Virus record (IMG/VR): IMGVR_UViG_3300027573_000779
Coordinates: 144,934 to 208,933 of that record
Direction: 5' to 3' (one strand)
Length of the DNA stretch: 64,000 nucleotides
Part shown: positions 543 to 63,922 of the stretch, piece after piece
Layout: the number at the start of each line of letters is the position of its first letter
Position numbering within the stretch: position 1 is the stretch's first letter
Notes under the pieces: model-generated
Databases searched by the model: none
Seen by the model: only the letters and a program-made list of their open reading frames with translations
What the model was told of the DNA's origin: nothing
Program-made: the position numbers and the translations under genes

Positions 543-1691
543 CTACCTAAACAGCATAGTTCCTTTATTCTCCTCGTGAAAAGTTTCAAAGTCCAAATTA
601 TAAATATCGGCAATAGACATTCCCTCCCGGTCAATATGGTTAACATTCTTGCCTAGTTTTTGCGCCAATGTTACTGATTTATCATAAGACAGCTTTTTAA
701 ACTCATATTCAACCTTCAAGCGCCCCTTCCGAAGCAGCGCTCTATCAATTGATTCTTTTTTGGCATTAAAAGTAACTATAATAGAAGTGTTTAAAATTGA
801 ACCCACAATGCCATCAGTTAAATTTAAAACGGTGCTGATGAGAGAATTGTTGCTTCCATCACGTTCCAAAACCGCTTTTTCGGCATCCTCTAAAATCAAA
901 ACAACATTGTTATTATCAGTTAATAATCTAATAAAATCAGGCTCAATTAAAGCATTAACCATATTGGTTGGCACGAATATAAATTTTCGTTGAACACACT
1001 TGGTAAGATGTTTAAGATAGCTGGTTTTTCCTGTGCCGGGGTCGCCGTGAAAAATATACAAACCAGACCGACTGGTGTTTAGGCGCTCAACAATTGAATT
1101 ATGAACATCAATAAATCCTTCTGGATAATTTAATTCTAAGTTAGTGTTTAGGTCGTCAAGAGGAAAATTACTTACTGCTAAGTTTCCAGAATGTCCCTTA
1201 ATTAAAAGACTAACTTCGGAGCGGTTTTTAGGAACAATTGGAAAACGTTCATTTAGTTTATTAAAAATATCAAAAAAATAAACGTCATCAACGCAAATAT
1301 CCAAACTATATTCACTCGCTTTCCCATGATTATTAACATTGAGTTTTAACAAACAATTCCCCTTTTTGTACTTACAAAAAAACACTTCATAAAAAGAACG
1401 GTTTTCGTCATCAGTAAAAATAGCCTGCGTTAAATTATCTGATTTGTTTGTATCACAATTAGATATAGTTTTTTCGCTTCGACTGTTCTTTACAATACTC
1501 CATATTTCAAAATCCTCCCCATCTAATATATGTTTAAAAAGCTCTTCGCTTATATCATTAAAAAAGTAGGTACTTGGTAAAGTTTTATAAAAACATTCAA
1601 ATAAATAGGGCAAACTAATATCACCTAAACTGGCATTATAATAATCAAAAAACTGAAAACTCTTATCCAAAGTTACTTTTTTAATTTCCAT
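543..1691 (-). CDS. AAA+ ATPase
   Basis: Walker A GDPGTGKT, Walker B LILEDAE, LNLTDG, and IDRALLRKGRL second region of homology. Confidence 0.9.
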   Translation of the reverse strand: MEIKKVTLDKSFQFFDYYNASLGDISLPYLFECFYKTLPSTYFFNDISEELFKHILDGEDFEIWSIVKNSRSEKTISNCDTNKSDNLTQAIFTDDENRSFYEVFFCKYKKGNCLLKLNVNNHGKASEYSLDICVDDVYFFDIFNKLNERFPIVPKNRSEVSLLIKGHSGNLAVSNFPLDDLNTNLELNYPEGFIDVHNSIVERLNTSRSGLYIFHGDPGTGKTSYLKHLTKCVQRKFIFVPTNMVNALIEPDFIRLLTDNNNVVLILEDAEKAVLERDGSNNSLISTVLNLTDGIVGSILNTSIIVTFNAKKESIDRALLRKGRLKVEYEFKKLSYDKSVTLAQKLGKNVNHIDREGMSIADIYNLDFETFHEENKGTMLFR

Positions 1692-2609: not shown

Positions 2610-4739
2610 TTGATGAAAACAAGAAAGCTTGTAGAACTTGATAATCAAATTAAAGCTTCTATCTTACAACAAGCTATGTCACAACAAGCCAATGAAAACT
2701 TAGTAAATAAGATTCATACAATTTATAATAATATTTCCCATGACATTTGGACAAATTTAGGCTCTCAAATATTTTTGTGTGCTTCCTCAACTTTTAAAGA
2801 GGACCAGTTAATCAAACAAACAAATGACTATTGAATCCTACTACTTAATCAAGGAAGAAGCGCTTTCTGCGCTCCAAAACGAAGTAAACAAGTATATTAA
2901 AGCGGGTTTTGAGCCGCATGGGTCGCTTGCGATTCGAGTTTTGGGCGCTAACAGTTACTTTTACATCCAACCAATGATAAAATATAATTCTTTTTGTAAA
3001 CAAAAAAAGAGCCATGAATTTAGTTAAAATTTATAAAACTATAGTAATAGGTCAAATTTACAAAACGGCTAATTTACTCAACTGTCAGATTTTTGAACAA
3101 ACAAAACTAACACTACCTCCTACATTCCCCCCCCTTCCCTTTGAGATTAAACGAGAAATTCGTAATCAACTTCATGACCAGTTTAAAAAAGAAATTTTTA
3201 GATAATTTTTTAGTTGTAATGACTTCAGAAATTAAAATACATAGAGTTGTTCGTGAACAACTTGATGGCAAATTAGATTGGAAAATAACTCCCATCTTTT
3301 CTATGTTTTCGAACAATCGTGAAATAATACAAAAGCAAATAGAAGAGGTGTTGGATGAAGTATTTTAATTTAGTATATAGCGAAATGAGAAAAATAGATG
3401 ACTCGTTTAACGATTCTATTTCAACTCAAAGTTTGCACTATCCACAGTCATGGATTATTTATATAAAGCTTGACCGCGAAATAATAGCACGTGTCGGAAT
3501 GCCAATTAAACTATTAATGGAGGAGGCTCTAGATGGACTCTTTACAAGATAAAATAAATAACATAAAACAACCAATACTCAACTCTATTGTGCTTCAAGG
3601 ATATAGATATCCTAAAACCAATTCAGGGACGTATTTATCGCTTTGCGATGAGACAATAAATAATTATCGAATCCAAATTGAAGAGCAAATGTTAATTGAA
3701 ACACAAATGTTTAAATGAACCGTTTAAAAAACCTTAATTTAAAAAACCTTAATATAGTATTTAATAAGATGACTGAAATAGATGCGTTGCTTGCTAAATC
3801 TATTAATTTTACATATTCAACTCGCCCCTCAGAAATTTATCTTGAAATTGACAACGAAACAGCAAGTATCAAATTTCCAGTTTGTCAAAATTGTGTTTTT
3901 GAAAATGTTTTTATAAATGAATAATCAGTTTACATTAGTTTTCAGCGCCCAAGAGAAGGAGGAGCTTCTTGAAATCTTTAAAAACCATCCTAAATGGCAA
4001 GAAAAAATTAAAAATTCAAGTAATTCTTTCGTGTGGGAAAACATTATAACTTATCAAGGTTGCGCCGATAGGGGGTTTTGTTTTAAATGTAATATCTTTC
4101 TAGCTGATACATTGTGTTTTTGCGGAGGGGGTTTTTGCCCCAAGTGTGGCGGCTATGTAGCTATGTAGTCCCGCGCTCTTCTCCTGAGAAACTTGATGGT
4201 ATTTTTGAAGTCCATTATACCAACAGTAACATAAAACCCATTAAACAAAGGTTTGAAAATGGTCAGTGGAAGGAAACAATTACTTGATATGAAAAAACGC
4301 GATTATGTGGCTATTCATTATGTGACTGCCCACCTTCTTTCTAAAATTACATCGTTTACCGGTTTAATAGAAAATAAATGTACCTATAATCCCAAAATAG
4401 AAGCTCTTTACTATAAAATAGGAGAAGCCTCAAATCGAGGCGCAGTTTCCAATTTTTGTATGAAGTTTTTTAGAAATGCTAACATTTTCAATAGAAACAA
4501 AAAAACACAGTTGTAAATATGGAGACCGTATGATGGATATTATTAATCCAGACGAAATAGAAGAGCGGGTTTTTGGAAATATTTTTGGTAAAATATTCAG
4601 TCGCATTGAAATGCCAATAATGGAATCAATTGAAAAACAAATTTTATTACCCGTTGAAAACATAAGAAAGGATATTGAAACGGCAACACTTGAATTTATT
4701 GTTAATAATGTGGTTGATAATAGCCCTTTTATAAACTAA
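2610..4739 (+). CDS. Cluster of short (55-90 aa) Q/I/N-rich helical hypothetical ORFs; several resemble highly diverged members of the QVWD mini-protein family
   Basis: Overlapping ATGA-coupled ORFs with segments such as IWTNLGSQIF, QIFEQ..IRNQLHDQ, IQKQIEEV and IMESIEKQI. Confidence 0.45.
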
Positions 4740-4746
4740 AAAAACA

Positions 4747-4752
4747 GTGTAA
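4747..4752 (+). promoter_or_regulatory. GTGTAA promoter-like element (class II), 8 nt before subtilase ATG
   Basis: The same hexamer lies at the same 8-nt spacing before several other genes (2410, 51974, 57304, 62832). Confidence 0.65.
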
Positions 4753-4760
4753 TAGCTTTT

Positions 4761-6857
4761 ATGAGTAAGCTATTACTAGTTTTGTGTTTTTTAACTTTCT
4801 TTGGTTTTAATGTAAACGCTCAACAAGCTTGGATAGGCAAGTTTAAAGAGAATGGCGGCAATGGTTTAGCGGGAGAAATTGTTAATTCGCGTCACTTAAA
4901 GCACCTTGATTTGCATAGGTTTGAATTTAAAAACACCGAAGTAGCAGAAAAACTCCTTTCTAGTGGCCGATTTGAGTTTTTGGAGCCAGATGAAGAAATC
5001 TCTATAAGCGCTATACCAAATGACACTTTTATATCTTCTCAGTGGGCAATTACCAACATAGAAGCTGACTTAGGATGGGACATTTCAACGGGTTCTGATG
5101 AGATTGTTGTAGCTGTTGTAGATACGGGCATTTGGACCCAACACAGCGATTTAACCAATAATCTTTGGAAAGACCCTCTCTCGGGCGCAAGCGGTTGGAC
5201 TGCAAGAGGAGGGGTATTAACTGAAGGGGTCACAGATGACCATGGACATGGTACGCATGTCGCGGGAATTATTGGCGCAACAGGTAATAACAATAAAGGT
5301 GTTGCTGGTTTAAACTGGAAAGTGAAACTTGCGGGGTTTAAGTTTATAGGTTCAAGTGGAACGGGCAGCAGAGGAGACGCTTTTTTGTGTCTTGATAAGA
5401 TAATTGAATTAAAGAAACGAGGTATTAACATTAGAGTTGTAAACAACTCATGGGGGAGCACGAGTAAAGATTATACCTTATCTTTGGCAGCAGCTTTTAA
5501 AAAGCTAGAAGAAAACAACATCCTTGCAGTAAATGCCGCAGGTAATGAAAGTCAAAATGGTGACATTAACAGTTTTATGCCAGCTAACCTTACCAATAAT
5601 AATGTCATTTCAGTTATGGCTAGCACCCCCTTTAATAAGAAAGCATCTTTCTCCAACTTCGGGTATACCAGCGTTGATATTGCTGCTCCGGGTTCTAGTA
5701 TCTTAAGCACTGTGCCACAAATAAAAGCCGCTTTAGGAACTTCTACAGGTTATAAAATGGCTAGCGGAACGTCTATGGCCGCTCCTCATGTAGCTGGACT
5801 TGCTGCTTTAGTTTTATCTTTAAATCCTTATTTAACAGTTGACCAAGTTAAAGAAGTTATTTTAAATAATGCTAGTTATGATTTAATGGATAGTCCCACC
5901 AAAAGTCAAACAGGCGGCAAAATCAACGTTAAAAAAACTTTATCGAACCCTCTTGTTTATCGACCAGAGAAGAACCATAGTCCTGTTTTATTTGTTAAAT
6001 ATCCTACCAATGTTGTAGGGGGGCAAAGAATTACAATTTACGCATCTGCGATTGACCCGGACGGCGACCCTGTTAAAATTATTATCTCACCACTTGATAC
6101 ACTTTTTCGAGAAAAAACAAGCACAAACGCTGCCGGAACCAATGTTTCGTTTCTTTCACCTAAATATGTGATTGATTATGTTTGTAAAGCGCGAATTATA
6201 GCATTAGATAATAACGGTTCGTCCGCTGAACAATATATAAATATCAATATCCTTAAAAATGGTATTTATGCGCCAACATTTGGTTTAGAAACTGTTGTTA
6301 TAAATAATCCTACTAATTCTCTGCATCCTATTGCTCGCGCCTGCTTAACCGAAGGAAGTATTATACCTCAGAAGTTAACATATGGTTATCTTTTTGGATT
6401 AAACGGTGGAGTTCAGGCTAATACTAGTTTTTTTGGAACTTTAACCAATTGTGCCAGCAAAACCGCCACATATGCCAACGGCATTTCAAATAAATCAATA
6501 GTTGTTTATACTATAGCAGAGACTCCTAAAAAAGAGTTAGTTTATTCTCCTTATACTTATTTTAGAGTCGGCACAGAAACTAGCTCTACTACTCAAGCGC
6601 CCATTATAGACCTTAAACTGAGCGCCCAATCTGGTTACGGCCCTTTGAACATAGCCTTTGATTTTAGTGGATGTAAAGACCTTTATGGACCTGTAACTTT
6701 TATAATCGACAAAGAATCCAATGGCCAGCGCGTTTATATTCCCGAAAAAGGAACGTTGACCTATCCTAATGTGGGCACTTTCAAGTCAAGATTGACAGTG
6801 CAGGGAAAATATTTTAGTGTGTCGGCATGGTTTTACGTAACTGTGTTAACACAATAA
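4761..6857 (+). CDS. Secreted S8 (subtilisin-like) serine peptidase with C-terminal Ig/PKD-like extension
   Basis: N-terminal signal peptide; catalytic motifs VVDTG, HGTHVAG, AAGN, GTSMAAPHV. Confidence 0.93.
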   Translation: MSKLLLVLCFLTFFGFNVNAQQAWIGKFKENGGNGLAGEIVNSRHLKHLDLHRFEFKNTEVAEKLLSSGRFEFLEPDEEISISAIPNDTFISSQWAITNIEADLGWDISTGSDEIVVAVVDTGIWTQHSDLTNNLWKDPLSGASGWTARGGVLTEGVTDDHGHGTHVAGIIGATGNNNKGVAGLNWKVKLAGFKFIGSSGTGSRGDAFLCLDKIIELKKRGINIRVVNNSWGSTSKDYTLSLAAAFKKLEENNILAVNAAGNESQNGDINSFMPANLTNNNVISVMASTPFNKKASFSNFGYTSVDIAAPGSSILSTVPQIKAALGTSTGYKMASGTSMAAPHVAGLAALVLSLNPYLTVDQVKEVILNNASYDLMDSPTKSQTGGKINVKKTLSNPLVYRPEKNHSPVLFVKYPTNVVGGQRITIYASAIDPDGDPVKIIISPLDTLFREKTSTNAAGTNVSFLSPKYVIDYVCKARIIALDNNGSSAEQYININILKNGIYAPTFGLETVVINNPTNSLHPIARACLTEGSIIPQKLTYGYLFGLNGGVQANTSFFGTLTNCASKTATYANGISNKSIVVYTIAETPKKELVYSPYTYFRVGTETSSTTQAPIIDLKLSAQSGYGPLNIAFDFSGCKDLYGPVTFIIDKESNGQRVYIPEKGTLTYPNVGTFKSRLTVQGKYFSVSAWFYVTVLTQ

Positions 6858-14338: not shown

Positions 14339-14497
14339 CTAAACGTAGATTGGATATGGATAATTTTCTTTTTGCTCTTGAGTTAGAAAGATTTGCATCC
14401 AAAGACTGCCAGCTTCAGAGACTTTTATATCTTGTGGAAGCTGCCCTTTGCCTAGCGCCACGAAAAAGTCTTGTCTTCTAATGAGATAAAGCTTCAT
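14339..14497 (-). CDS. 52-aa ORF not in track (MKLYLIRRQD...)
   Basis: ATG directly follows a perfect junction element (14498-14519). Confidence 0.55.
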   Translation of the reverse strand: MKLYLIRRQDFFVALGKGQLPQDIKVSEAGSLWMQIFLTQEQKENYPYPIYV

Positions 14498-14519
14498 ATG
14501 CTCAAGCGCCGCAGGGCTT
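14498..14519 (-). repeat. Junction element AAGCCCTGCGGCGCTTGAGCAT (consensus copy)
   Basis: Identical to copies at 33295-33316, 33521-33542 and 39861-39882. Confidence 0.9.
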
Positions 14520-16520
14520 TATGAATTATAATCCCTTTCACAAGACCGACTACAAAACACCTTTTCTTGCATCTCGTTCTTGTTTTTATCGTCCCTGTTA
14601 ATACCATACCTGAATTTAGCAGGTTGGCCGCACCACGCGCACTCACCCTCTGCTTTTTGGCGCACAACGTTAAAACGTCCAAAAGGGTCTCTTGAGATTG
14701 ATACTGTATTCATGTTCTCAATAATAGAGAGTCTTTTTATGTTTGCAAGACTAAATTTGAGAGTGCCCACATTTTGGACATTTGAGCACGTCAACCATTG
14801 TAACCTTAGAAGGAAGGAAACTAAGCGTATCTCCGTCTCTTGCGGGTTTACCATCAAGGCGACCTGTACCATTGACAAGAGCTTTTACCCTTTTTAAGGG
14901 GAACTTTACATCGCCAGCAAATTTTTGTGCCTTGTTTGGTCTTCATGCTTTATGTTACTTTCCGTCAAATTATACAATATTTATGTGTCAACCGCAAATA
15001 TCTTGTGGTCTATGAGTTACCTGTTCGCCATTTTTCGCCACAAGAACCACTGTTACCTGATATTCTTTGCGAGCTTTAAGCTGTTGCGCCGCTTTCTTTT
15101 GCGCCGAATAGGAGGTTTCAGCTTCGACTTCAATTTCCTTGCCACGATAAAAAGCTTTATATATATTCATAAAAGAGATTATACATAGTCTTTTTTATGC
15201 TACAAGCCAAACTTTATACTGCTAGGGCTGTATTCGTCTCAATAGGTGGCATACACTGATTAATCACTTCTAGCAATTCTGACAATTTATTGTCATCTAT
15301 GCCAAGAAATTCCCCTATAATACTTCTCATATCCTTATCTGTTAAAGCCACTTGTGCAATTTTAAGGGTTTCGAGTGCCTCTTCTCTTGTAAATTCTTTT
15401 GTGTTCATTGATTATAAAAATAGCGTATAAGGAGAAGAGCCGCAAGTAAAATTAATATGCTCATTTATTTATTCCTGTTCCTCTTCTGTGTCTTTTTCTT
15501 CCAGTTCATCTTCCAGACGTTCAACAACCTCTGCGAGTGTATCACAACTAGACACAACCCACTCTTGACTTGTCGAAATTGCTGGTTCGCAATGCCCTAA
15601 AGTCCTATACTTGAATTGCTGGTACTCCTGTTGAGACATTGACCGCCGACAAATTTCCTTAAACTCGTTTAATCCTTCCTCTAGTTCAGTGGCGAGTTCT
15701 GCGAGACGTTCCCAATTAGCTTTTGTAATTTTATTCATTGAGTTTCACTGATTTAATTTTAAATTTTTCGTCTGTTCCCTCGTACTTTTTGACTAGTTCT
15801 GCTAGTTTGGTTTGCGCTGGCGCTAGGTCAAGCCATACACCAAACTCCATACAATGGAGCCAGTCACCATCGCCCACGTTATCCACGTTATCATTATAAC
15901 TAGGACACCACTGCACTATGTAATAAACGCTCTTCATGGTTAAAAGATACAATATCTTTTTTAACTGTCAATAGCGGTTATTGTCAATCTTTCTAATCGC
16001 ATTAATCGCTGGTATAATACTTTCTGCACCAAGTTCATATGTAATTGATTCTTCAACAACACACAAAAGAGTCTTGGCTAGTCTAACAGGATGTTCCCCG
16101 TTAGAGGAAAACTTTAGTCTTTCGTCATATGTCAACTTTTTATAAAGCTGTAAAGCTCTCTCTTTTAAAATTTCGCCTGCTTTAACAGACATTTCTTTAA
16201 TAGCAGATTCAAATTCAGCACTACTACGGGCAACTTCTTTAGTATTCATAAAGTATAAAAGATACAATATCTTTTTTAAAAGTCAACACTCAAGCGCCGT
16301 TTACAGTTAATCTGCTAATTTGACTTCGCGCCATACCGTCAAGGCATTCAAAAGCTTTTCCTTGTCTTTCTATTCTAGTTTTTGCGCCATTGATGATATT
16401 AGCTACCTTTTGCGCATTTTCGCGCCCGCCGCAATCCTGAATCAGGTTAAAGTTCCCGTTAGAGAACACCCACTTGCGAAAGCTCCGATTGAAGTTAAAT
16501 AGTGTTTTATTCATATTCTG

Positions 16521-17956: not shown

Positions 17957-18124
17957 AGCCAATTTATTTGATAGACCTATATAACCCTTCAAAAGGGCCG
18001 GTTGGCGGCACTATCTTTTTAACGACTTTTAGCTACGCCGTATGAATTAGCCAACCCTATCACTTGAAAAGCTTAACAGATTTTTTCCAAAAAGCAACAA
18101 TAAAGCCCTTCGGCGTCTGAGAAT

Positions 18125-18520
18125 TTAAGCTGCAACGGGTTCTGCCACTTCAGTTACAGGAATATTTTCTGTAACGTGCTCAGTCGCAGGCTGTTCGGGA
18201 GCATTGCTCACTCCTGACTTTTCAGCCGCTCGCGCCACCTTTTTGGCCAGTTTTTCAGCCTCTTTAGCCGCCTCTTCCTTGTGTTTATTTTCCCAATAAG
18301 CCTTTTTCGAAGCTGAGATTTTGTCCCTTCCAGCTTGGCTCATCTTACTTCCCTTGGGTCGCCCCTTTCGAGTTTGAGAAGGAGAAGGAAGAAGGCTAGG
18401 AAGAGTTGAGGGAATATTAATTCCACTCATCAACTGATTGTATTCAGACTGCTTTACCGCAATCTCTTCCAGCAACTTTGCCGCTCGCAAGTGAGTTTCG
18501 GGCGTTAACACTATGTTCAT
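18125..18520 (-). CDS. Basic putative DNA-binding / nucleoid-like protein
   Basis: N-terminal coiled coil, AT-hook-like KGRPKGS, and a NUMOD3-like MSQAGRDKISASKKAYW helix. Confidence 0.5.
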   Translation of the reverse strand: MNIVLTPETHLRAAKLLEEIAVKQSEYNQLMSGINIPSTLPSLLPSPSQTRKGRPKGSKMSQAGRDKISASKKAYWENKHKEEAAKEAEKLAKKVARAAEKSGVSNAPEQPATEHVTENIPVTEVAEPVAA

Positions 18521-22537: not shown

Positions 22538-22740
22538 GCGCCCGTTAATGGTTCAAACGTCCTATCTTTAGGCCAACGGGCTAACCTATGGTCGTTAGCG
22601 TATTTTAGCCAAGCTTCTGCTTTTTCTTTATCCTTCCAAATATTCAAGGCAATCTGGCGCATTTCTAGGGCAGTTTGTTCCTCTTGATAATGCCACATAT
22701 CCCTATCATCTGAGGACTTAATGTCACGCCAAGAAATCAT

Positions 22741-22762
22741 ATGCTCAAACGCCGCAGGGCTT
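22741..22762 (-). repeat. Junction element (1 mismatch)
   Basis: Fills the whole gap between the stop at 22762 and the ATG at 22740. Confidence 0.85.
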
Positions 22763-24273
22763 TAGCTTTTCGTTTTTATAGGTTTCGCGCTTAGCCAGAG
22801 AGTTTGAACTTTCTTTGATTTGGGAAACAACTTATCTAAAATATTTTCTGCTTCTTTAATGTGATGTTCAAGCGCCGCCTTTGATTGTTCTTTATACTGG
22901 TCACTGGACTGAACGAAACTTTTATATAGCTGGACAATCATATCCAATCTACAGTTAGCGTTCTCAGTTTCGCGAATAAAATCTAAAGCGTTTGTCTTCA
23001 TACTCTCAAGTGTCGCAGGGTTTTAATTCCAAAATGCAATTCCGTGGCTAAATTCTTCTAAATGAAGAGGGTTCATTTCAAGGTCATTTAAACCATGTAT
23101 ATCAATGTAGGCGATAGGCAAATCATCTTTAGCGCCGTTTTTCTCCAGCAATTCTTTAAGTTCTTTCCACGTCATAAACAAGAGAATACGATATTTTTTT
23201 TATTCCGCAAGCTTTAACTTGGGTTAATAAAAGGATTAAACTTAGACTGAGAGTCAAGATTTCTATCTAAGATGCTCTGTTGCAACATCTTAATAGCTTC
23301 AACGCAATCAGCATCTTTAGGTCCGCGCCCTTTGTTCTTTTTAATGTGATTCCAGATTTTATCTGTAGCACAACACCAAGGAAGATTTGTATTCCAATCA
23401 TTGTCTTCTTTTTGGAAGCCAATACCAACTGTGCCAAACTTGGGAAAACATACAATTGCCTGATTCTTACTAACTTTAACCCGCATCAACCAAAAATCTT
23501 CATCCAATGGAGGAGTTATTAAAAGTGTGTTGCCAAAAGGTTTTGGGTCTTGAATTTTGTTTGAATTAAGTTCAATTGTAAGTTTCATATTCAGATGATA
23601 CAAAATCTTTTTTAAGAATCAAGCTCTTTTTTAGCTCTTATGTCTATCCCAAATCGACAATAGCCCGCCCAAGCTGGAATGTTTGAGGCTGAACAGACCT
23701 GTAAATTATGCCACTTATGGAATTCTTTGGGCCAATACTTAGGGTCTGCAAGCACTCCTAGCCTAAAGTGTTCCCGCGCCTCATTAGGAGAATCTGCTAG
23801 AATAAAACGCCGCTGGTTCTGATAGCAACCCCACTCGCCTGTAGTCAACAAGTGTTCACTGGTAAAAGTAACCATCCATCGCTTGTCAGGGGGATACAGC
23901 TTGATATCAATTGGGTTTTCATTCATATCCCAATCATATAATATCTTTTTTAACTGTCAACCTTGAAAATCTTCTCTAGGGGTTACCTTTATCTCAAGAG
24001 GAACAACCCAAAAAACCAACAAAAGGTCGCCATTGGGAACCTCTTCGAACCGTCCCACAGTCCAATTAAAAGATTTGTAATCTGCTAGCTTTTGCATCAA
24101 ATGAGCGCCGCCATCTAGCGCCCCTTGCGGACTTTTACAGTTTAAGCCATACACATAAAAAGCCCCTACTGATAAACCTCTGAAGTATACTGCCGTATAT
24201 TCTCTGCTTGGAGTAATAATTGTTTTCATTGTTTTTGTATTCTACAACATCTTTTTTAACCCGCAAGCTTTTC

Positions 24274-31157: not shown

Positions 31158-32502
31158 TAATCCAAAACCTCTGTAAAGTCTTGTATTTGCTTGGTGCCGC
31201 CCTCTGATTCTTTTATTAGTTTAATATAAGTTTCCTTATTAATAGTCCTTGAAGGCATACTGGCTAGTTCTAATGTAAAAATGTCGGGAGTTGATTGCGC
31301 ATAACTTGAATGCCTAAACAAACAACCAGTTAGTAAATTAGTAAACTTGTAATAGCCCTCAATATAGACCTTTGCGGTTAGATAGTAATTGTGGGGAGAC
31401 AACATCTTAAATTGTTCCTTGAAGGTCAAAATAAGTTTTCATCATGCCTTTCTCTGTATCGTTCGCTTCTTGAATTAGTTTTTTGCGTCTAGCACGCCAA
31501 ACACTCATTGAAGTTTCAAGTTGTGCGTTATAAGGGACGTATCCACTAGAATAAAACCCACACTCGTATCTTTCGAGTCCAATTTTATAACCAATTTTTC
31601 GTGCGTCTGGAATCCCTGCCTTGGTAAGCTGGTCTTTAGTCCAAAATCTTTTGCGCTCTTTGTCTATATAAGCCGCTTCCAGTATTTCGCCTGTTTTAGG
31701 ATAAACAAATTTATTCATAAATGCTCCAAAACACCAGAATACAGCATCTTTTTAAAATGTCAATGCTCAAGCACCGCAGGGCTTCAGTTCTAATCTAATC
31801 CCTTCAATTTTGTTTTTTTCAGTTAAATACCACCCCTCTATTATTAAATCAATATCAATGGTGGTCTTGGGACCAAAGATAGTCCATTTTTTGTTTTCAG
31901 CCTTATCAAACACAAGTAATGTATTACCATAGTTCATAACGTTAGCTTTGTCCCCTTCAATAAAAGGAGCGTTTTCTATAGTCTGACCTAAATCGTCTTG
32001 GATTGTTTTAATTAAGAAAAACATATCAGCCACCACCCACCCTTCGCCCAAATGATTATTTTTTGGGTCCTTTGGTTTTTGACCTATAGACCAAACAACA
32101 ATCTTAGAGATGCTTTTTGATTTCATCTGGACAAACTTCTAAAAGATAAATTTTTGTTAGTTTATAAATACCTTCAATTAATTGTTCTCTCTGAGCTACA
32201 ACTTTGTCCACTTCCTGTTTTACTCTTTTGCCTTCTTTTAATGGCAAAGAAGCAAAATATCTAAAATGACCGTCATAAGAACGTATATAGGCATAACCTT
32301 CTCTCCCTAAAAATTTTGGAACTGCAAACCCAACCCCACAAAGAAAACCCGGAAATTGGTCATATTCCCAAAAAAACATCCTTTTTTCGTGTTTTTTGCC
32401 GTCGCCATTACATTCTATACAACGGTTTTTTTCAATAGTCCCTGTTCCTTTACACTCTTTACACTCTCTCTTATTACTTAAATTCCTCATATCATAACTC
32501 CC

Positions 32503-32963
32503 TCAAAATGAGTTTTTGGTAGTTACAAAAACTTGTTCCATAATTTGGAGTCGAACCTGTTCTTGGGTTTGTTCCCAACCTCTTTCTAATTGGTCCCAAA
32601 CTTGGTTTCCAACTTGGTTTCCAATTTGATTGCTAAAGTGATACCTAATTTGATTTAGAATTGTTAAATATTTTTTATCCATTTCACAAACAGGTCTAAG
32701 ACAAAAACCATACCGAATGCTAAAACTAATATTAATATAATGTACATTCATTCAACTAAACTGTTGATTTGGTGCTCAATTTGGTAGCCAATTTCTGCCC
32801 ACATTTGGTTTTGAGTTTGGTCCCAAACTTTGTTTTCTATGGTTTGATGCCCAATTTGCTTAGAAATTTGAAGTCTTATTAAGTCCAAAGTATCTGTTAA
32901 GACTTGGCACTGAAACCGGTACTGGTCCCTAATTTGGTCTTTTGTTTTAAATCTCTTCAACAC
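32503..32963 (-). CDS. Two tandem QVWD-repeat mini-proteins (32748..32963, 32503..32751)
   Basis: NQIGNQVGNQVWDQ; KVWDQTQNQMWAE. Confidence 0.7.
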
Positions 32964-33290
32964 TTAGATTGGTTCTTTGATAAGTTTCGTATACATCAAT
33001 AGGGTCGCTGGCTGTCCAAGGCATTAAAATAAAATTAATTCCAAATGGGTGATACATTTCCATTTTTTCTTTGTCTGTTGCCTCGTCTAAATAGCCAGCC
33101 ACATACCAATCCAGCCCTTCAAATGGGTAGGCCCAGTTTTTTCCTTTCTTATCCGGCCTGTGTCCTACGACATAAATTCTATCTCTGTCGTTTCGTTTAT
33201 AACGCGCCCCTTCCCATTGGTCCGAACCAATCTTTACTTTAACTGGTTGCACGTCAAAACACCCACATTGTTCTAACCATTCTTTTAAAG

Positions 33291-33547
33291 TCATATGCTC
33301 AAGCGCCGCAGGGCTTAGTTTATTCTAATTCCCACCATTCGGGGTCCACTTCTGCCAAAGCTTTACCTAAGTCACTAGGAAAAACAACGGCAATATCATA
33401 AACGGGATTTTCTTTACCTTCACTATCTGATTCTGTCAAACTCAAACCCCTATGATTCAGAGTTAGGTTAGAGACTTTCTTAAAAAATGTTTCTAATTTG
33501 GCTTTATCGTGTTCTTTCATATGCTCAAGCGCCGCAGGGCTTAGTTT
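33291..33547 (-). repeat. Perfect ~31-bp direct repeats (33291-33321, 33517-33547) containing the junction element and bracketing gene 33320..33520
   Basis: tcatatgctcaagcgccgcagggcttagttt occurs twice. Confidence 0.9.
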
Positions 33548-33833
33548 TATTTATAATAAGTCTGAATATAGGCATCTGCCACCTGTTTGAAATAGCTAAA
33601 AATTCGCTCTTTTGTTTGTTCTGTTCCGTCGCCGCTCATATTAACAGTTACGCCTCCAATCTTGAGAGGCTTTACTTTACCATCCCTAAAAAGCCTCAAA
33701 AAACGCGAAACTGTCATCAGTTCAACCCACCTACGTTCAGGGGTCTTGATTTCGACCTTGAACTTCTTCACCTTTGGAAGGAAGTTGGCTACCAACGTAA
33801 TTGATATCATGAAACGATGATAGCGGGTCTTTT

Positions 33834-34259
33834 TTAAAAATCAAGTCGATTGCTCAAGCCGCTCCTAAAAATTTCACTTACAATTTGGTCCCAAATTTGC
33901 CCCTTAACTTGGTTCCAAGTTTGTCCTCCAATTTGGCTCCCAACTTGTTTCCAAACTTGCTCCCAGACTTGGTCCCCAACTTGGCTCCAAACTTGGTCTA
34001 TAATCCTTTCTTTAATTATTTGGGTCATAAAGGCTTAAATTTGGTCCCAAATTGCGTCCTCAAGTTGTTTCCGAAGGTTGTCCCAAAGTTGTTCCCTAAG
34101 TGGATTCCAAACTTGTATAACCTGCATCCAAATTGGGTCCCAAACCTGTTCATCAAGCTGACTTTTAACTTGGTCCCCAACTTGGTCCCAAATAATCTTA
34201 CGAATCTCAATATCGGTTTGGTACCAATCCTCCGATAATTTGTCTAGCATCATTTTCAT
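33834..34259 (-). CDS. Two tandem QVWD-repeat mini-proteins (34035..34259, 33834..34028)
   Basis: DQVWSQVGDQVWEQVWKQVGSQ; IWDQVGDQVKSQLDEQVWD. Confidence 0.8.
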
Positions 34260-34581
34260 TTATTAAAACTTTTTTAAAAATCAATCACAAAAAGAAACTA
34301 AGGAATTCTTGGTGGCAGTGGTAAAACAATTCCTAATTTAGTAAGGGCTTGTTCATCTGTATTGTTCAACCCGTTATAAATCACTTTTGTAGCTATATAA
34401 AGACACTCGGCTTGTGTCCAATCTGGAAACCTTTTCTCTAAAGAATCACAAAATCTATCCCTTAATTCTTCAACAGGTATGGGATTAGATTTAGAAACAA
34501 ATGTAAAAGCAATTTTGAAAACCACGTCTGCTAAAATTTCAGAATTATCACTTAAATCTTTTAAAATTTTTGGTGAAATTT

Positions 34582-34797
34582 TCATAACCATATTTGCTCA
34601 AGAACTTGGTTCCGAACTTCCATGAAAACGTCATTCCTTATTTGTTCCCTAGATGGGTTTCCAACATGCTTCATAACTTGGCTCCCAATCTCAGTTCGGT
34701 CCCCAACTTGGTCCATAACGTGGTCCCAAACTTGGTCCATAACGCGGTCCCAAACTTGGTCCACAACTTGATACTGAATTTTGGTGACTAAGCTCAA
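34582..34797 (-). CDS. QVWD-repeat mini-protein
   Basis: QVVDQVWDRVMDQVWDHVMDQVGD. Confidence 0.8.
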   Translation of the reverse strand: MSLVTKIQYQVVDQVWDRVMDQVWDHVMDQVGDRTEIGSQVMKHVGNPSREQIRNDVFMEVRNQVLEQIWL

Positions 34798-36174: not shown

Positions 36175-37018
36175 ACCTTTACTTAACAAGCCTGCAAACC
36201 AACAAACAGGTTAATTTGCAGCGTCTTCCCCGAAGACATTTTAATGATATCAAGCCTTTCTAAAAAGTCAATCTCTCAAGTGCCGAGGGGCTAAGTTTTC
36301 GCTAAGTGCGCCGCAAGGCTAATCTTTTTGGTGAACTTTAAATGCTAGTATCTTAGTGGGGTTTGGACAACGCCAACCGTCAGTAATACACTCATATCCA
36401 AGAGTCCTCAGAACTGTTCTAAAAGTATTTGTTTCACTTAATGATAGTTCTACCGCATCGCCCACATTCATTGTGTTCGCTAAAGTAATGAGATTCTTTA
36501 AGGTTTGTTCTCTTGAACCCCTTCCTTTAGGAATGGGTAAATTTTTATGTATCGTAAAACTTTTAACCATTCGTTTTATGGTAAAGGTAACATTTTACTT
36601 GGGATTAGCCTAAATCTATCTTTTTTGTTTTTGCTTTGAATATATCTTTTAATATCATCGTGTCTTCCATAAATACCCCTTTCAGAGTATTGATAAGGCT
36701 CCCATGCACCGTATCCATCCCAATCGGTACAAAACTCAATTACTATCTGAAAAACGGGCGCTTTTAAGTGAACCCATTTTCCTAGCTTAGAATCATAAAC
36801 ATGTACTCCAGCATTATCATAATATTTTTTGCGCTCTATTTCTTTATAGGTTGTGCCGCCTTTATTGCCACATTTCGGACAATATTCCCAAGGGTCTTCA
36901 ATATTTAAAGTAAACTGTTTATGGCAGCTTAAGCATTTAAAACGAGCATAATGGCCATCTCCATGGTCTTCTTGCCATTTGGGACTAATTTGTAATAAAG
37001 TTCTCATACAGGGCTATT

Positions 37019-37243
37019 TTATTTTTGGTCCCAAACTTGGTCCTCAACTTGGTCCCAAACTTGGCCCTGAACTTGGTCCCAAACTTGGTCCCGAACTTGG
37101 TCCCGAACTTGGTCCCGAACTTGGTCCCGAACTTGGTCCCGAACTTGGTCCCAAACTTGGTCCCAAACTTGGTCCCAAACTTGGTCCCGAACTTGGTCCC
37201 GAACTTGGTCCCAAACTTGGTCCTCAACTTGACCCTCAATCAT
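37019..37243 (-). CDS. Archetypal QVWD-repeat protein, 17 x (Q-V-[WRE]-D)
   Basis: MIEG(QVxD)17QK; same frame and strand as all diverged paralogs. Confidence 0.8.
37025..37233. repeat. 12-bp tandem array, 17 copies (+ strand AACTTGGTCCC[A/G])
   Basis: Direct reading. Confidence 0.97.
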
Positions 37244-37256
37244 AAAGATTTAGTTT

Positions 37257-37382
37257 TTAATTCCTCAACTTGCCAATAAACTTGGTCTTTAATTTGTTAC
37301 CATTAACTTGGTTCCAAACTTGGTCCCCAACTTGGTTCCGAACTTGGCCCCAAACTTGGCCCCAAACTTGGTCCGCGTTCAT
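37257..37382 (-). pseudogene. Frameshifted QVWD-repeat gene (not in track)
   Basis: MNADQVWGQVWGQVRNQVGDQVWNQV, then a frame change; QIKDQVYWQVEE continues in another frame. Confidence 0.6.
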
Positions 37383-37389
37383 AAAAGAA

Positions 37390-37411
37390 GGGTAGCCCCG
37401 CAAGGCTACCC
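37390..37411 (-). terminator. Hairpin/terminator after DUF932 gene
   Basis: GGGTAGCC-N6-GGCTACCC. Confidence 0.6.
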
Positions 37412-39395: not shown

Positions 39396-40764
39396 CTAGT
39401 TTATTTTTATGTTCCAAATGTGTTCCACAACTTGGCCTTCTACTTCTTCCCCAACTTCTTCCCAAACTTGGCCCCAAACTTGTTCAAAAACCTGTTCCCA
39501 AACTTGACCTTCTACTTGGTCCCAAATTTGTTCCCCAATATGGTTATGAACTTGGCTCCTAATTTGGTCATCAATTTGCTTCCTAATGTTATCTTTCGTC
39601 ATTAACGCGCCGATTTAAATTCTGGTATTTCCATCCAATGCGCCCGAACTGAAGGTAAAGCTATTGTACTCGTATAAGTTAAATCATTGTCCGTCATAAC
39701 AATAATTTTTGTGCCTTGCTGCTCCCATCTTCCAGTAATTTGCTGCCATCCCTCTTTCCGTTTAAGAGACCAAAGAACGGTGGTTTTTTGTGGAGGTTTC
39801 TCTTTCTCGAAATTCTTCCAAATCATAAAAACGATGATAATAAAAGTTTTTAAAATGTCAATGCTCAAGCGCCGCAGGGCTTAAGCCCTTTTTTTAAAAC
39901 GCCGAGGGGCTAAGCGCCATAGGGGGTTCTGTGTTCCAAGCTTGGTGCCAAATTTGGTTTTCTACTTGGCTCCCAATCTGTTCCCAAACTTGGTCCCAAA
40001 TCTGTTCCCAAACTTGGCCCCAAACTTGGCCTTCTATTTGGTTCCAAATTTGGTCCCCAATATGGTGGTCCCCAATATGGTCCCTAACTTGGTCCATAAC
40101 TTGGTTCTGAATGTTGTCTCTTGTCATGTTCTTAAGGAGGGCTAGGTTTCACTAAAACATTTATTTGAAATTTGTATCATAACTTCATGCCGTAATTGGT
40201 TCCAGTGTTCCTGACCTTGGTAAACTTGGTCCCCAACTTGGTTCCAAACTGCTTGGTTCCCAACTAGGTTTTGAATACTCTTAAAAGTTTGCCCCAAAAC
40301 GCCATTATATAACTGATGATGTAACTGATTCTCAATCTTATTTCTAGTCATGTGTCTCTAAAACTTGGTCCCCAACTTGGGTCCTAACTTGGTTCCGAAT
40401 TTCTTCTAAAGATGGATGTAAAAAACGTCGCCCCCAAAGTAACGGGTGCGAAGTCGGGTCTTGGATTTGATTATAAATTTGCTTCAAAATTTGGTCCCAA
40501 GTTTGGCCCCAAACTTTTGCGAACACCTGACTCTTAATCTCATCTTTGGTCATGTTTTTAGTAAATTTTGCTGCACCGAAAAACTTGGTACAAAATTTCA
40601 TTTTTAATTTCATACCTTATTTGTGGGTCCCAATAATCCTGAATTTGGTTATGAACCTGCTTGCTAATTTGGTTGCCAGCTTGGTTGAACAACGGTCTTA
40701 CAACAAGTTCCGAAGTTTGACCCCGAACAAAAGCATCCTGATTCTCAATCTTATCTTGGGTCAT
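39396..40764 (-). CDS. Cluster of five QVWD-repeat paralogs (40558..40764, 40344..~40553, 40142..40351, 39894..40127, 39396..39602) interrupted by one unrelated ORF
   Basis: Shared N-termini MTQDKIENQ, MTKDEIKSQ, MTRNKIENQ, MTRDNIQNQ, MTKDNIRKQ. Confidence 0.8.
39861..39918 (-). repeat. Stacked junction elements fused to a promoter -35 box; block duplicated at 44097-44167
   Basis: taaaatgtcaatgctc..gccgcagggcttaa..cttttttt..aaacgccg.aggggcta at both sites. Confidence 0.8.
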
Positions 40765-44082: not shown

Positions 44083-44164
44083 ATTTTTAATTGTATTAAA
44101 AATTTTTAAAATGTCAATGCTCCAAAGCCGCAGGGCTTAACCTTTTTTTAAAACGCCGGAGGGG

Positions 44165-44564
44165 CTAAAAAATGTCAAAAGTTTGGTCCCAAATACGGTC
44201 CAAAACTTGGTCTGCAACTTCATCTCTAAATTCACTAATGTCCCAAATTATAAGCGCAATCTGGCCCTTCACACTCCCCTCAACTTGGTCCGCTATTTGT
44301 CTTACGAGTGTGTCTTTAATTTTTTGGACCTTGTTATTTACTCTCATAAAAAATCTGGTTCCAATGGTTTAGAAGGTATTCCCAAATTGGGTCTGCAACA
44401 TCCTCAATCGTAAGTGCAATACTGTCTCTTTGGTCCCAAATCAGGTCTCTTACTGACTGCCCAACGTGGCTTACAATTTGGTCAACAAGGTGGTCGTCAG
44501 ATTCATGAATTCGATTTCTAATTTGATAAAGAGTTTCGCTCTCAATTTTGGTTAAATATATCAT
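44165..44564 (-). CDS. Two QVWD-family mini-proteins inserted between rIIA and rIIB
   Basis: QIADQVEG...ADQVLDRIWDQ; VDQIVSHVGQSVRDLIWDQ. Confidence 0.7.
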
Positions 44565-63845: not shown

Positions 63846-63922
63846 TGGTTGCGGGAGAAGGATTTGAACCTCCGTCCTCTTGGTTATGAGCCAAGCGAGC
63901 TACCAGACTGCTCCATCCCGCG
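63846..63922 (-). tRNA. Initiator tRNA-fMet (CAT), CCA encoded
   Basis: CGCGGGATGGAGCAGTCTGGTAGCTCGCTTGGCTCATAACCAAGAGGACGGAGGTTCAAATCCTTCTCCCGCAACCA; C1:A72 mismatch, A11-U24, TTCAAAT loop. Confidence 0.96.

What the first reader, a model, noticed from the sequence alone, without database searches (positions are those of the whole stretch)
33291..33547. One gene precisely bracketed by perfect 31-bp direct repeats
Gene 33320..33520 lies between two identical tcatatgctcaagcgccgcagggcttagttt copies. Recombination between them would remove exactly one gene and leave one element in front of the next ATG. This is the cleanest candidate for a recently inserted cassette.
Basis: partly seen in the sequence, partly recalled or inferred. 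Interest (0 to 1): 0.7.

Follow-up and report, generated by a model that had tools for sequence, protein, structure and literature searches.

The report
Phage gene flanked by regulatory repeats
The two identical 31-base repeats around a small phage gene are neighbouring copies of a roughly 25-copy intergenic signal that marks gene boundaries in the early region of a large uncultured phage; recombination between them could cut out or paste in exactly one gene, as described for T4-type phages, but no gene-less version was found.

Summary
Identical 31-mers lie at 33291-33321 and 33517-33547, and a 66-aa minus-strand gene (33520..33320) sits exactly between them.

The repeats are not cassette-specific ends. 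They are the two most consensus-like members of a family of about 25 copies. The family is strand-specific and intergenic, and is confined to the early, small-gene region of a 208.9-kb uncultured tailed phage.

Each copy runs from the upstream stop codon through GCC-N4-GGC and an invariant GAG. It then abuts either the next ATG (12 copies, including these two) or the -35 box of a sigma-70-like promoter (8 copies). The closest known thing is the PeSL, the 'promoter-early stem-loop' of T4-type phages. These two copies lack the promoter half, and the phage is not demonstrably T4-type.

The pair is 31/31 identical, while every other pair is 27/31 or less and other close pairs are 19-23/31. The two copies are therefore probably young or recently homogenised.

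The gene belongs to a small-protein family found, without its neighbours, in unrelated viral contigs. No empty allele, circle or relative lacking the gene was found, but the available data (k=31 contigs, near-clonal assemblies) could hardly have shown one.

The phage has a UvsX-like recombinase and no integrase.

Verdict: a PeSL-like variant, moderately interesting, with mobility plausible but unproven.

The parts
33517..33547 (-). Upstream copy of the intergenic element. It holds the last base of the TAA of the 87-aa gene, then AACT, the core (AAGCC, CTGC, GGCGCTTGAG), then CAT and ATGA of the 66-aa gene.
   Evidence: 32.0 bits, second-best family member; 30/31 to consensus
33320..33520 (-). 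The bracketed gene, 66 aa. It belongs to a small-protein family with no Pfam or PHROG model (conserved KLE-FF, LT-NH, AVV-PS-LG-ALEKVDPEWW).
   Evidence: called by JGI and ENA; 49 relatives
33291..33321 (-). Downstream copy of the element. It holds the last two bases of the TAA of the 66-aa gene, the same core, and ATGA of the 115-aa gene.
   Evidence: (32.1 bits, best family member)
33547..33810 (-). Upstream neighbour, 87 aa, first gene of the transcription unit. No family found.
32947..33294 (-). Downstream neighbour, 115 aa. Its only relative is one distant one (33% identity) in IMG/VR locus L003.
33817..33844 (-). Sigma-70-like promoter candidate (TTGATT, 16 nt, TATCAT) with the ATG of the 87-aa gene 6 nt after the -10 box. 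It is the only promoter-like site that can serve the bracketed gene.
   Evidence: (family D16)
31736..31791 (-). Composite copy that closes the seven-gene unit: the element directly followed by TTGACA, 16 nt, TATTCT. This is the PeSL-like architecture.
22737..23028 (-). Second example of 'element, one gene, element': the 79-aa gene 23001..22762 lies between two diverged copies (23/31 identical).
14494..14524 (-). Family copy of the ATG type, 27/31 identical to the pair although 19 kb away.
39857..39887 (-). Family copy with an exact 19-nt core fused to a promoter, and preceded by a second small hairpin with a T-run.
44113..44143 (-). Family copy fused to a promoter, upstream of the 301-aa gene that follows rIIA.
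18095..18128 (+). The only family copy in the opposite orientation. It lies directly after the stop of the minus-strand gene 18520..18125.

Best explanation
The two 31-mers are adjacent members of a dispersed, orientation-specific intergenic element family (about 25 copies). The family punctuates the early, small-gene region of a 209-kb uncultured tailed phage.

Each element is a gene-boundary module. It starts at or just after the upstream stop codon, carries an invariant GCC-N4-GGC(G) with a free 4-nt centre (a small hairpin in RNA, or an interrupted palindrome in DNA) and an invariant GAG, and ends 2-5 nt before the next ATG or 2-3 nt before the -35 box of a sigma-70-like early promoter.

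Its primary role is in gene expression. I infer that it acts on the early polycistronic RNA as an attenuating, processing or stabilising signal. At this locus it cannot be a strong terminator, because five further genes downstream have no promoter of their own.

As a by-product, identical copies in direct orientation are substrates for the phage's own homologous recombination (a UvsX-like recombinase is present) or for replication slippage. Exchange between the two copies would delete, and the reverse reaction or unequal exchange would insert or duplicate, exactly one gene without damaging its neighbours. This is the mechanism described for PeSLs in T4-type phages.

The pair is far more alike than any other pair, so it is probably young: either an element-mediated insertion of the 66-aa gene or a recent conversion between the two copies.

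Shown: the family, its anatomy and distribution, the transcription-unit context, the exceptional identity, and the independent distribution of the gene family.

Inferred: the RNA-level role, recombination as the route, and the youth of the pair.
For: Family and anatomy:
- 14 core matches in the window against 0 expected.
- 18 copies with up to 4 mismatches in the genome, 17 of them at window 14.5-44.1 kb and 16 of those on the coding strand.
- About 25 copies by nhmmer, with the two finding copies scoring best.
- Invariant columns are A10, C12, C13, C17, G18, G25, A26, G27, and the central 4 nt vary.
- The element is followed by ATG or by TTGACA at a fixed short distance.

Context:
- Spacers are only 26 and 25 nt, with no promoter or terminator consensus in them.
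- The unit runs from promoter 33844-33817 through seven genes to the composite copy at 31791-31736.

Pair identity:
- 31/31, against mean 20.4 and maximum 27 for other pairs.
- Other pairs closer than 600 nt are 19-23/31.

Gene independence:
- 49 relatives in 1.84 billion representatives.
- Ten IMG/VR loci with GC 35-57% share none of 30 neighbouring genes and carry no element.

Recombination machinery:
- A UvsX-like recombinase is present.
- No tyrosine or serine recombinase, with controls ringing.

Precedent:
- PeSLs run from upstream stop to downstream start, cluster in hyperplastic regions, mediate gene-sized indels and give mini-circles (PMC2839356).
- In PST and nt-1 the stem-loop lies just upstream of the promoter (PMC4122927).
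Against: - No empty allele, duplication or circle was detected, and gene-node depth equals flank depth (X1 13.2 against 12.9 and 12.5; X2 6.6 against 6.0 and 5.6).
- All five assemblies are filled and essentially identical, and the deletion junction is absent from JGI contigs.
- The hairpin is weak (-5.3 kcal/mol, z about 0) and has no covariation beyond shuffled controls, so an RNA structure is not demonstrated.
- The two copies have no promoter half, so they are not PeSLs in the strict sense.
- 31 bp is near the lower limit of homology for efficient recombination (my own knowledge).
- No close relatives exist to show element-associated indels.
Confidence: 0.65

Rival explanations
1. The element is a promoter for a phage-directed form of RNA polymerase (for example with the phage's own sigma-like protein). 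It would start leaderless transcripts at the adjacent ATG. The bracketed gene would simply have its own middle-mode promoter, like its neighbour.
For: - High sequence conservation without covariation.
- Strict orientation.
- A fixed short distance to the ATG; GCGCTT plus 6 nt plus ATG mirrors the -10 plus 6-9 nt plus ATG layout at 17 of 23 sigma-70-like sites.
- The GAG is not at a Shine-Dalgarno distance, and Shine-Dalgarno motifs are rare in this phage.
- A 233-aa protein with sigma-70 region 2 is encoded just upstream of the window.
Against: - The sigma match is marginal (25.4 against a cut-off of 24 bits, region 2 only; no PHROG).
- No single-subunit polymerase was found, though that search had no positive control.
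- The element is absent from the structural-gene region where a phage sigma would be expected to act.
- The one inverted copy sits directly after a gene end, and sibling hairpins with T-runs look terminator-like. Both point to a 3'-end role.
Confidence: 0.15
2. The identity of the two copies is maintained only by selection on a consensus regulatory signal. The 66-aa gene is old at this position and nothing moves.
For: - Both copies match the family consensus at 30 of 31 positions and are the two top-scoring members.
- Copy 14494, 19 kb away, is 27/31 identical.
- The gene's GC (0.363) and GC3 (0.284) lie within the range of its neighbours.
- No empty allele was found anywhere.
Against: - The other 15 copies deviate from the consensus at 3-12 positions, so selection tolerates variation.
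- No other pair exceeds 27/31, and other close pairs are 19-23/31.
- The gene family is found elsewhere without any of its neighbours.
Confidence: 0.25
3. A dedicated site-specific cassette system (integron-like, or a small transposable unit with a long target duplication) inserted the gene, and the 31-mers are its recombination sites.
For: Precise bracketing of one promoterless gene by identical direct repeats.
Against: - No tyrosine or serine recombinase in the complete genome, with positive controls ringing.
- The same sequence separates many unrelated genes and is fused to promoters.
- Homologues of the gene in other viruses have no flanking repeats.
- 31 bp is far longer than usual target-site duplications (my own knowledge).
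Confidence: 0.03
4. Assembly artefact: a 255-bp de Bruijn loop was wrongly threaded into the contig.
For: Logan k=31 contigs break exactly at the 31-mer, and the gene is a separate 255-bp unitig.
Against: - Independent assemblies with larger k (MEGAHIT k141, JGI) give the same order.
- An X3 contig bridges copy 1, with 64 and 128 nt on either side.
- Gene-node depth equals flank depth.
- The ORF has 49 relatives.
Confidence: 0.01

Closest known systems
PeSLs (promoter-early stem-loops) of T4-type phages: RB49/phi1, PST/T4 and nt-1/KVP40 (PMC2839356, PMC4122927)
   Same: - Short repeated intergenic cassettes concentrated in a region of small genes of unknown function.
- They run from the upstream stop codon to the downstream start codon.
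- In eight copies here a stem-loop-capable sequence lies immediately upstream of a near-consensus TTGACA-N16-17-TATAAT promoter, as in PST and nt-1.
- Direct repeats flank single genes, so exchange would delete or insert gene-sized modules.
   Different: - The two copies in the finding, and ten others, have no promoter. The element abuts the ATG directly.
- The stem is only 3-7 bp and weak, not a poly-G/poly-C terminator.
- An invariant GAG tail has no described PeSL counterpart.
- The phage has a lambda-J-like tail fibre and no detectable Gp23, so it is not shown to be T4-type.
- No indels between relatives and no mini-circles could be shown.
Intercistronic hairpins of phage T4 early and middle transcripts, and bacterial REP/BIME elements (my own knowledge, not tested here)
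   Same: Small repeated hairpin-capable sequences between cistrons of polycistronic mRNAs. They affect mRNA stability or read-through and can serve as recombination substrates.
   Different: Here the primary sequence, not just the fold, is conserved, including the single-stranded tail and exact spacing to the next ATG or -35 box. There is no evidence of stability or processing activity.
Integron gene cassettes with attC sites
   Same: Single promoterless genes delimited by repeated sites in one orientation; excision would give a circle carrying one gene and one site.
   Different: No integrase. The element is much shorter than an attC site, is fused to promoters elsewhere, and is identical in sequence rather than conserved mainly in structure.
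Compact phage-specific promoters (T7-type 20-23-nt promoters; hairpin promoters of N4 virion RNA polymerase) (my own knowledge)
   Same: A conserved sequence of roughly 20 nt, one orientation, directly upstream of the start of the expressed unit; the N4 promoters contain a small hairpin.
   Different: No phage RNA polymerase was found (no positive control). Only a marginal sigma-like protein is present, and the elements are wedged against upstream stop codons.

Membership tests
PeSL (promoter-early stem-loop cassette) | Contains a sigma-70-like early promoter (-35 and -10 boxes) | tested here: not met
   The 26-nt and 25-nt spacers at 33521-33546 and 33295-33319 hold no promoter match. It is met for eight other family copies (window 16284, 25596, 31761, 36270, 39859, 44115, 60230 and genome 24058).
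PeSL (promoter-early stem-loop cassette) | Contains a sequence that forms a stable stem-loop acting as terminator or attenuator | tested here: inconclusive
   The hairpin is possible but weak (-5.3 kcal/mol, z -0.1). 82-86% of cells are pair-compatible, but there is no covariation above shuffles. No T-run follows and no terminator-like site is reported at the locus.
PeSL (promoter-early stem-loop cassette) | Intergenic, spanning from the upstream stop codon to the downstream start codon | tested here: met
   Stop codons overlap or lie within a few nt of the 5' end, and the ATG lies 2-5 nt after the GAG.
PeSL (promoter-early stem-loop cassette) | Concentrated in hyperplastic regions of small, mostly unknown genes | tested here: met
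   17 of 18 core copies lie at window 14.5-44.1 kb among 50-150-aa genes, and there are none in the structural or replication region.
PeSL (promoter-early stem-loop cassette) | Associated with insertions, deletions or replacements between closely related phages | not testable with these tools
   No close relative exists in IMG/VR, GenBank phages, JGI contigs or the protein collections. All assemblies of this phage are near-identical.
PeSL (promoter-early stem-loop cassette) | Recombination products (mini-circles, deletions) detectable | tested here: inconclusive
   No skip-226 joint was found and there is no deletion junction in JGI contigs. However, k=31 contigs cannot contain a diagnostic word for a deletion between identical 31-mers, and no raw reads were served.
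PeSL (promoter-early stem-loop cassette) | Host genome is a T4-type myovirus | tested here: inconclusive
   rIIA, RNA ligase and a UvsX-like recombinase are present. Gp23 and UvsY were not found, though those searches had no positive control. A lambda-J-like central tail fibre is present.
Integron-type gene cassette | Tyrosine recombinase (IntI) encoded with the array | tested here: not met
   PF00589 is absent from the complete genome while ringing in 14 of 14 controls. Resolvase is also absent.
Integron-type gene cassette | attC site with paired inverted core sites and extrahelical bases | not tested
   The element is 31 nt with a 3-7-bp stem. No attC model was run.
Intrinsic (Rho-independent) terminator | G+C-rich stem of at least 5 bp followed by a T-run | tested here: not met
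   No terminator-like site is reported in 33291-33547. The element is followed by GAGCAT, not a T-run, and five downstream genes depend on read-through.
Described RNA families (Rfam 15) | Match to a curated covariance model | tested here: not met
   Only a tRNA passes gathering thresholds in the window, and nothing falls at any element copy even at E up to 5.

The most novel reading that the evidence does not exclude
The element is a portable 'start module' for a phage whose early genes are translated from leaderless mRNAs. Either it is cut by a sequence-specific endoribonuclease just before the ATG, or it acts as a compact alternative promoter. In both cases each internal cistron would gain a 5'-terminal AUG like the promoter-proximal genes. 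Because the module carries a stop codon at one end and the start codon at the other, any ORF dropped between two copies would be expressed at once. That would make the early region a recombination-driven gene-sampling array in a phage outside the T4 group.
Probability: 0.15. Interest if true: 0.7.

Novelty: new variant of a known kind. Interest (0 to 1): 0.4.

Why it matters
Repeated regulatory cassettes that double as recombination sites are one of the few concrete mechanisms proposed for how large lytic phages gain and lose their many small accessory genes. So far they have been described only in T4-type myoviruses.

This locus suggests the same logic in a very different, uncultured 209-kb phage from groundwater and sediment. 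The architecture is stripped down: stop codon, small palindrome, GAG, start codon. The family is unusually sequence-conserved, and one pair is perfectly identical around a gene that demonstrably travels alone among viruses.

If excision or insertion at these elements were shown, it would extend the PeSL model beyond T4-like phages. It would also give a clean natural example of a one-gene module.

The predicted leaderless design of the early genes is a separate, testable feature that bears on host identity and on how internal cistrons are translated.

Tried and rejected
- **Megablast against GenBank phages:** the locus gave no match.
- **Protein-pattern scans of IMG/VR with the three genes:** only one distant relative of the 115-aa gene turned up (L003, 33% identity, GC 0.50). 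It shares no other neighbour and no element.
- **Word-index protein search:** it reported the 66-aa and 115-aa proteins as unique. For the 66-aa protein this was wrong, because exhaustive HMMER found 49 relatives. I withdrew my interim 'ORFan' label. The closest relatives sit on contigs under 1 kb with no DNA served, and there is none in GenBank phages by tblastn.
- **Large-alignment locus search:** A smaller alignment worked.
- **Structure prediction:** the single-sequence AlphaFold model of the 66-aa protein had pLDDT 63.7. That is too poor to search with, so I did not use it.
- **2,027-aa Rhs/Tc-type protein:** it appeared among the HMMER hits through seven short stretches in its repeat region. 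I judged this a repeat or composition artefact and did not pursue it.
- **Reads:** three DNA runs hold the locus, but only as k=31 contigs. No RNA run was listed.
- **RegB-type nuclease acting on the GAG box:** not found, but that search had no positive control.
- **The GAG as a Shine-Dalgarno site:** rejected on spacing.
- **The motif elsewhere:**
  - The exact 22-mer is absent from IMG/VR.
  - The 19-mer occurs in two contigs; L007 is a chance match in coding sequence.
  - The loop-free pattern gives 109 single hits, about the chance level.
  - G001 has three copies but shares no protein with this phage.
  - Bacterial hits are dominated by one Anaerolineae non-coding RNA in which the 19-mer plays a different structural role. 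I judged this probably coincidental.
- **My early 'T4-like' label:** downgraded after typing the structural genes.
- **My early view that consensus-likeness alone explains the 31/31 identity:** weakened by the pair statistics.

Full report
**1. Observation**

The 31-mer occurs exactly twice in the window, at 33291-33321 and 33517-33547 on the + strand. No further matches appear at up to three mismatches, and none are expected by chance. All genes in this region are on the minus strand.

Read on that strand, each copy is AAACT, then AAGCC-CTGC-GGCGCTTGAG, then CAT-ATGA. The first A of the upstream copy completes the TAA of the 87-aa gene (33810..33547). Its ATG starts the 66-aa gene (33520..33320). 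The downstream copy begins inside the TAA of the 66-aa gene, and its ATG starts the 115-aa gene (33294..32947).

Identity ends abruptly outside the 31-mer, apart from an AATAA(A) stretch with a one-base indel.

**2. Genome**

The window is the last 64 kb of a 208,933-bp IMG/VR virus record rated complete. It is a large tailed phage with these features:
- rIIA, an RNA ligase, a macro-domain protein and an anti-restriction protein in the window;
- a UvsX-like recombinase, a DnaB-type helicase, a DNA polymerase and a ribonucleotide reductase;
- a lambda-J-like central tail fibre and a 5,468-aa ORF elsewhere.

Gp23 and UvsY models did not match, though those searches had no positive control. I therefore do not call it T4-type. 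It comes from groundwater and freshwater-sediment metagenomes.

**3. The repeats belong to a family**

- The 19-nt core matches 14 places in the window at up to three mismatches, against 0 expected.
- It matches 18 places in the genome at up to four mismatches. Of these, 17 lie between window 14.5 and 44.1 kb, and 16 of those are on the coding strand.
- An nhmmer profile finds about 25 copies, and the two copies of the finding score highest (32.1 and 32.0 bits).
- In an alignment of 18 copies, the invariant columns are the A before the stem, CC, C-G, and GAG. GG-C is nearly invariant, and the four central bases vary freely.
- All copies are intergenic, and the 5' end usually contains or touches the upstream stop codon.
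- The 3' end abuts one of two things: the next ATG, 2-5 nt after GAG (12 copies, including the pair), or the -35 hexamer of a near-consensus TTGACA-N16-17-TAnnnT promoter, 2-3 nt after GAG (8 copies).
- A second gene, 23001..22762, is bracketed in the same way by diverged copies.

**4. Local transcription context**

Neither spacer (26 and 25 nt) holds a promoter or terminator consensus. The nearest upstream promoter-like site is 33844-33817, with the ATG of the 87-aa gene 6 nt after its -10 box.

The next regulatory site downstream is the composite element plus promoter at 31791-31736. The bracketed gene is therefore the second of seven genes in one predicted early operon. The element cannot be an efficient terminator here, or five genes would be silent (inference).

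**5. What the element does**

- The RNA hairpin is weak (-5.3 kcal/mol, no better than shuffles).
- Pairing is compatible in 82-86% of cells but shows no covariation beyond column shuffles.
- No Rfam family matches.
- Shine-Dalgarno motifs are rare in this phage and lie 5-10 nt from the ATG. No ordinary gene has GAG at 2-4 nt. The GAG is also invariant in promoter-fused copies, so it is not a ribosome-binding site.
- At 17 of 23 promoter-like sites the ATG follows the -10 box by 4-9 nt, mostly 6-8. This predicts leaderless early mRNAs.

These facts leave three functional readings:
- An RNA boundary signal (attenuation, processing or stabilisation). I favour this because of the tight link to stop codons, the one inverted copy placed right after a gene end, and sibling hairpins followed by T-runs.
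- A compact alternative promoter. A marginal sigma-70 region-2 protein is encoded nearby.
- A protein-binding site.

I could not separate them, because no RNA data are available.

**6. Is the pair special?**

Both copies match the family consensus at 30 of 31 positions. I first took this as a sufficient explanation for their identity.

The pair statistics say otherwise. Among all other pairs the mean is about 20 of 31 and the maximum is 27. The other five pairs lying within 600 nt of each other are 19-23 of 31, no better than distant pairs. Adjacency as such therefore does not homogenise copies, and selection tolerates 3-12 deviations from the consensus in other members.

The two copies therefore probably share a more recent origin than the rest. 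That origin could be element-mediated insertion of the gene or a conversion between them. I cannot tell which.

**7. Is the gene a traveller?**

Pfam and PHROGs give nothing, and a word-index search found only the gene itself. An exhaustive HMMER search then found 49 relatives at 45-62% identity. These are mostly 50-190-aa proteins with a well-conserved motif set.

Ten IMG/VR contigs (GC 35-57%, up to 231 kb) encode members. In those loci none of 30 genes surrounding the locus in this phage has a homologue. None carries the element, and none shows flanking direct repeats.

The gene is thus distributed independently of its neighbours. Its GC and GC3 are unremarkable here, and no near-identical donor exists.

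**8. Search for the empty allele**

- Five contigs from JGI and ENA assemblies all have the order 87-66-115 aa. They are identical in the locus, apart from a cluster of transitions at one contig end about 1 kb away.
- Three runs hold the locus, but only as k=31 Logan contigs. These break exactly at the 31-mer.
- A deletion between identical 31-mers creates no new 31-mer, so such contigs cannot reveal it (my reasoning). Only depth is informative, and the gene unitig has the same depth as its flanks (13.2 against 12.9 and 12.5; 6.6 against 6.0 and 5.6).
- One X3 contig bridges copy 1.
- The exact deletion junction is absent from JGI metagenome contigs. The positive control finds only this phage.

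So no empty allele was found, but the test had little power.

**9. Mechanism available**

The genome encodes no tyrosine or serine recombinase, with positive controls ringing. It does encode a UvsX-like recombinase.

Homologous exchange or slippage between the copies is therefore the plausible route. A 226-bp double-stranded circle is sterically unfavourable, and 31 bp is near the minimum for efficient homologous exchange (both from general knowledge). I therefore expect rare unequal exchanges between genome copies rather than abundant mini-circles.

**10. Comparison with what is known**

PeSLs of T4-type phages are repeated intergenic cassettes made of a stop codon, an AT-rich stretch, a sigma-70-like promoter, a stem-loop, a Shine-Dalgarno site and a start codon. 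They are concentrated in hyperplastic regions, associated with gene-sized indels between close relatives, and shown to form mini-circles (PMC2839356; PMC4122927).

Eight composite copies here fit that description closely. The two copies in the finding share the position, the stop-to-start span, the family and the recombination logic. They differ in three ways: they lack the promoter, they have only a weak stem, and they carry an invariant GAG tail. The host phage is also not shown to be T4-type.

I therefore file this as a new variant that works like a PeSL, not as a member in the strict sense.

**11. Side track**

The 19-mer also occurs three times, with different loops, in an unrelated GC-rich viral contig that shares no protein with this phage.

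It also occurs inside a conserved structured non-coding region of Anaerolineae genomes, where it forms part of a long-range helix. I regard the latter as coincidence and the former as unexplained.

**12. Verdict**

This is a known kind of phenomenon in a new setting and a new form. Mobility of this particular gene is plausible but unproven. Interest is moderate.

Noticed in passing
window 21900-49300, e.g. 33834-34028, 34035-34259, 34582-34797, 36985-37400 (minus strand): There are dozens of arrays of a 12-bp unit (GGTCCCAAACTT on the + strand). They make up many small genes whose products are runs of a four-residue repeat (D/x-Q-V-W). This is a striking paralogous family of repeat mini-proteins interleaved with the early genes.
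   Followed up: no
window 14013-60232, promoter-like sites listed: At 17 of 23 TTGACA-N16-17-TAnnnT sites the ATG of the next ORF begins 4-9 nt (mostly 6-8) after the -10 box. This predicts leaderless early mRNAs. Shine-Dalgarno motifs are rare genome-wide. Both bear on host identity.
   Followed up: partly
L008/L009-L011 = IMGVR_UViG_3300020577_013934 positions 1421-1438 (-), 1494-1511 (-), 4778-4795 (+): An unrelated viral contig (GC 0.68) carries three exact AGCC-N4-GGCGCTTGAG motifs with different loops. Two are tandem in an AT-rich non-coding stretch after a TTGACC. It shares no protein with this phage. The reason for the shared motif is unknown.
   Followed up: partly
L149, L155, L156, L158, L160 (about 4420-4800), L162, L166, L167 (Anaerolineae/Chloroflexota genomes): A conserved non-coding region of roughly 300 nt has several hairpins showing compensatory changes. 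It lies between HU-like and small genes on one side and a ParM-like gene on the other, and has no Rfam family. It looks like an undescribed structured RNA of a mobile element or plasmid. It contains the phage's 19-mer, probably by coincidence.
   Followed up: partly
window 34498-34575 (97-aa gene 34591..34298), compared with L006: A 7.3-kb contig from another sample is identical to the window over 4.2 kb except for 11 G>A / C>T transitions packed into 78 nt at its contig end. All are non-synonymous. This could be an assembly-end artefact, or local hypermutation or a variant allele.
   Followed up: partly
genome G000:115243-131646 (+) and G000:142464-143162 (-), outside the window: A 5,468-aa open reading frame lies in the structural region. 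A 233-aa protein with a marginal sigma-70 region-2 match lies just upstream of the window.
   Followed up: partly
window 39885-39910 and 44140-44165 (minus strand), also genome 24085-24110: Composite copies are preceded by a second small hairpin (GCC-N4-5-GGCG) followed by TTTT and an A-run. The full unit there is mini-terminator, A-tract, element, then promoter.
   Followed up: no
window 63849-63922 (-): A tRNA gene lies at the end of the record (Rfam tRNA, 63.7 bits).
   Followed up: no
method note: The word-index homology search called the 66-aa protein unique, while exhaustive HMMER found 49 relatives. ORFan calls for very short proteins from the index search alone are unreliable.
   Followed up: yes
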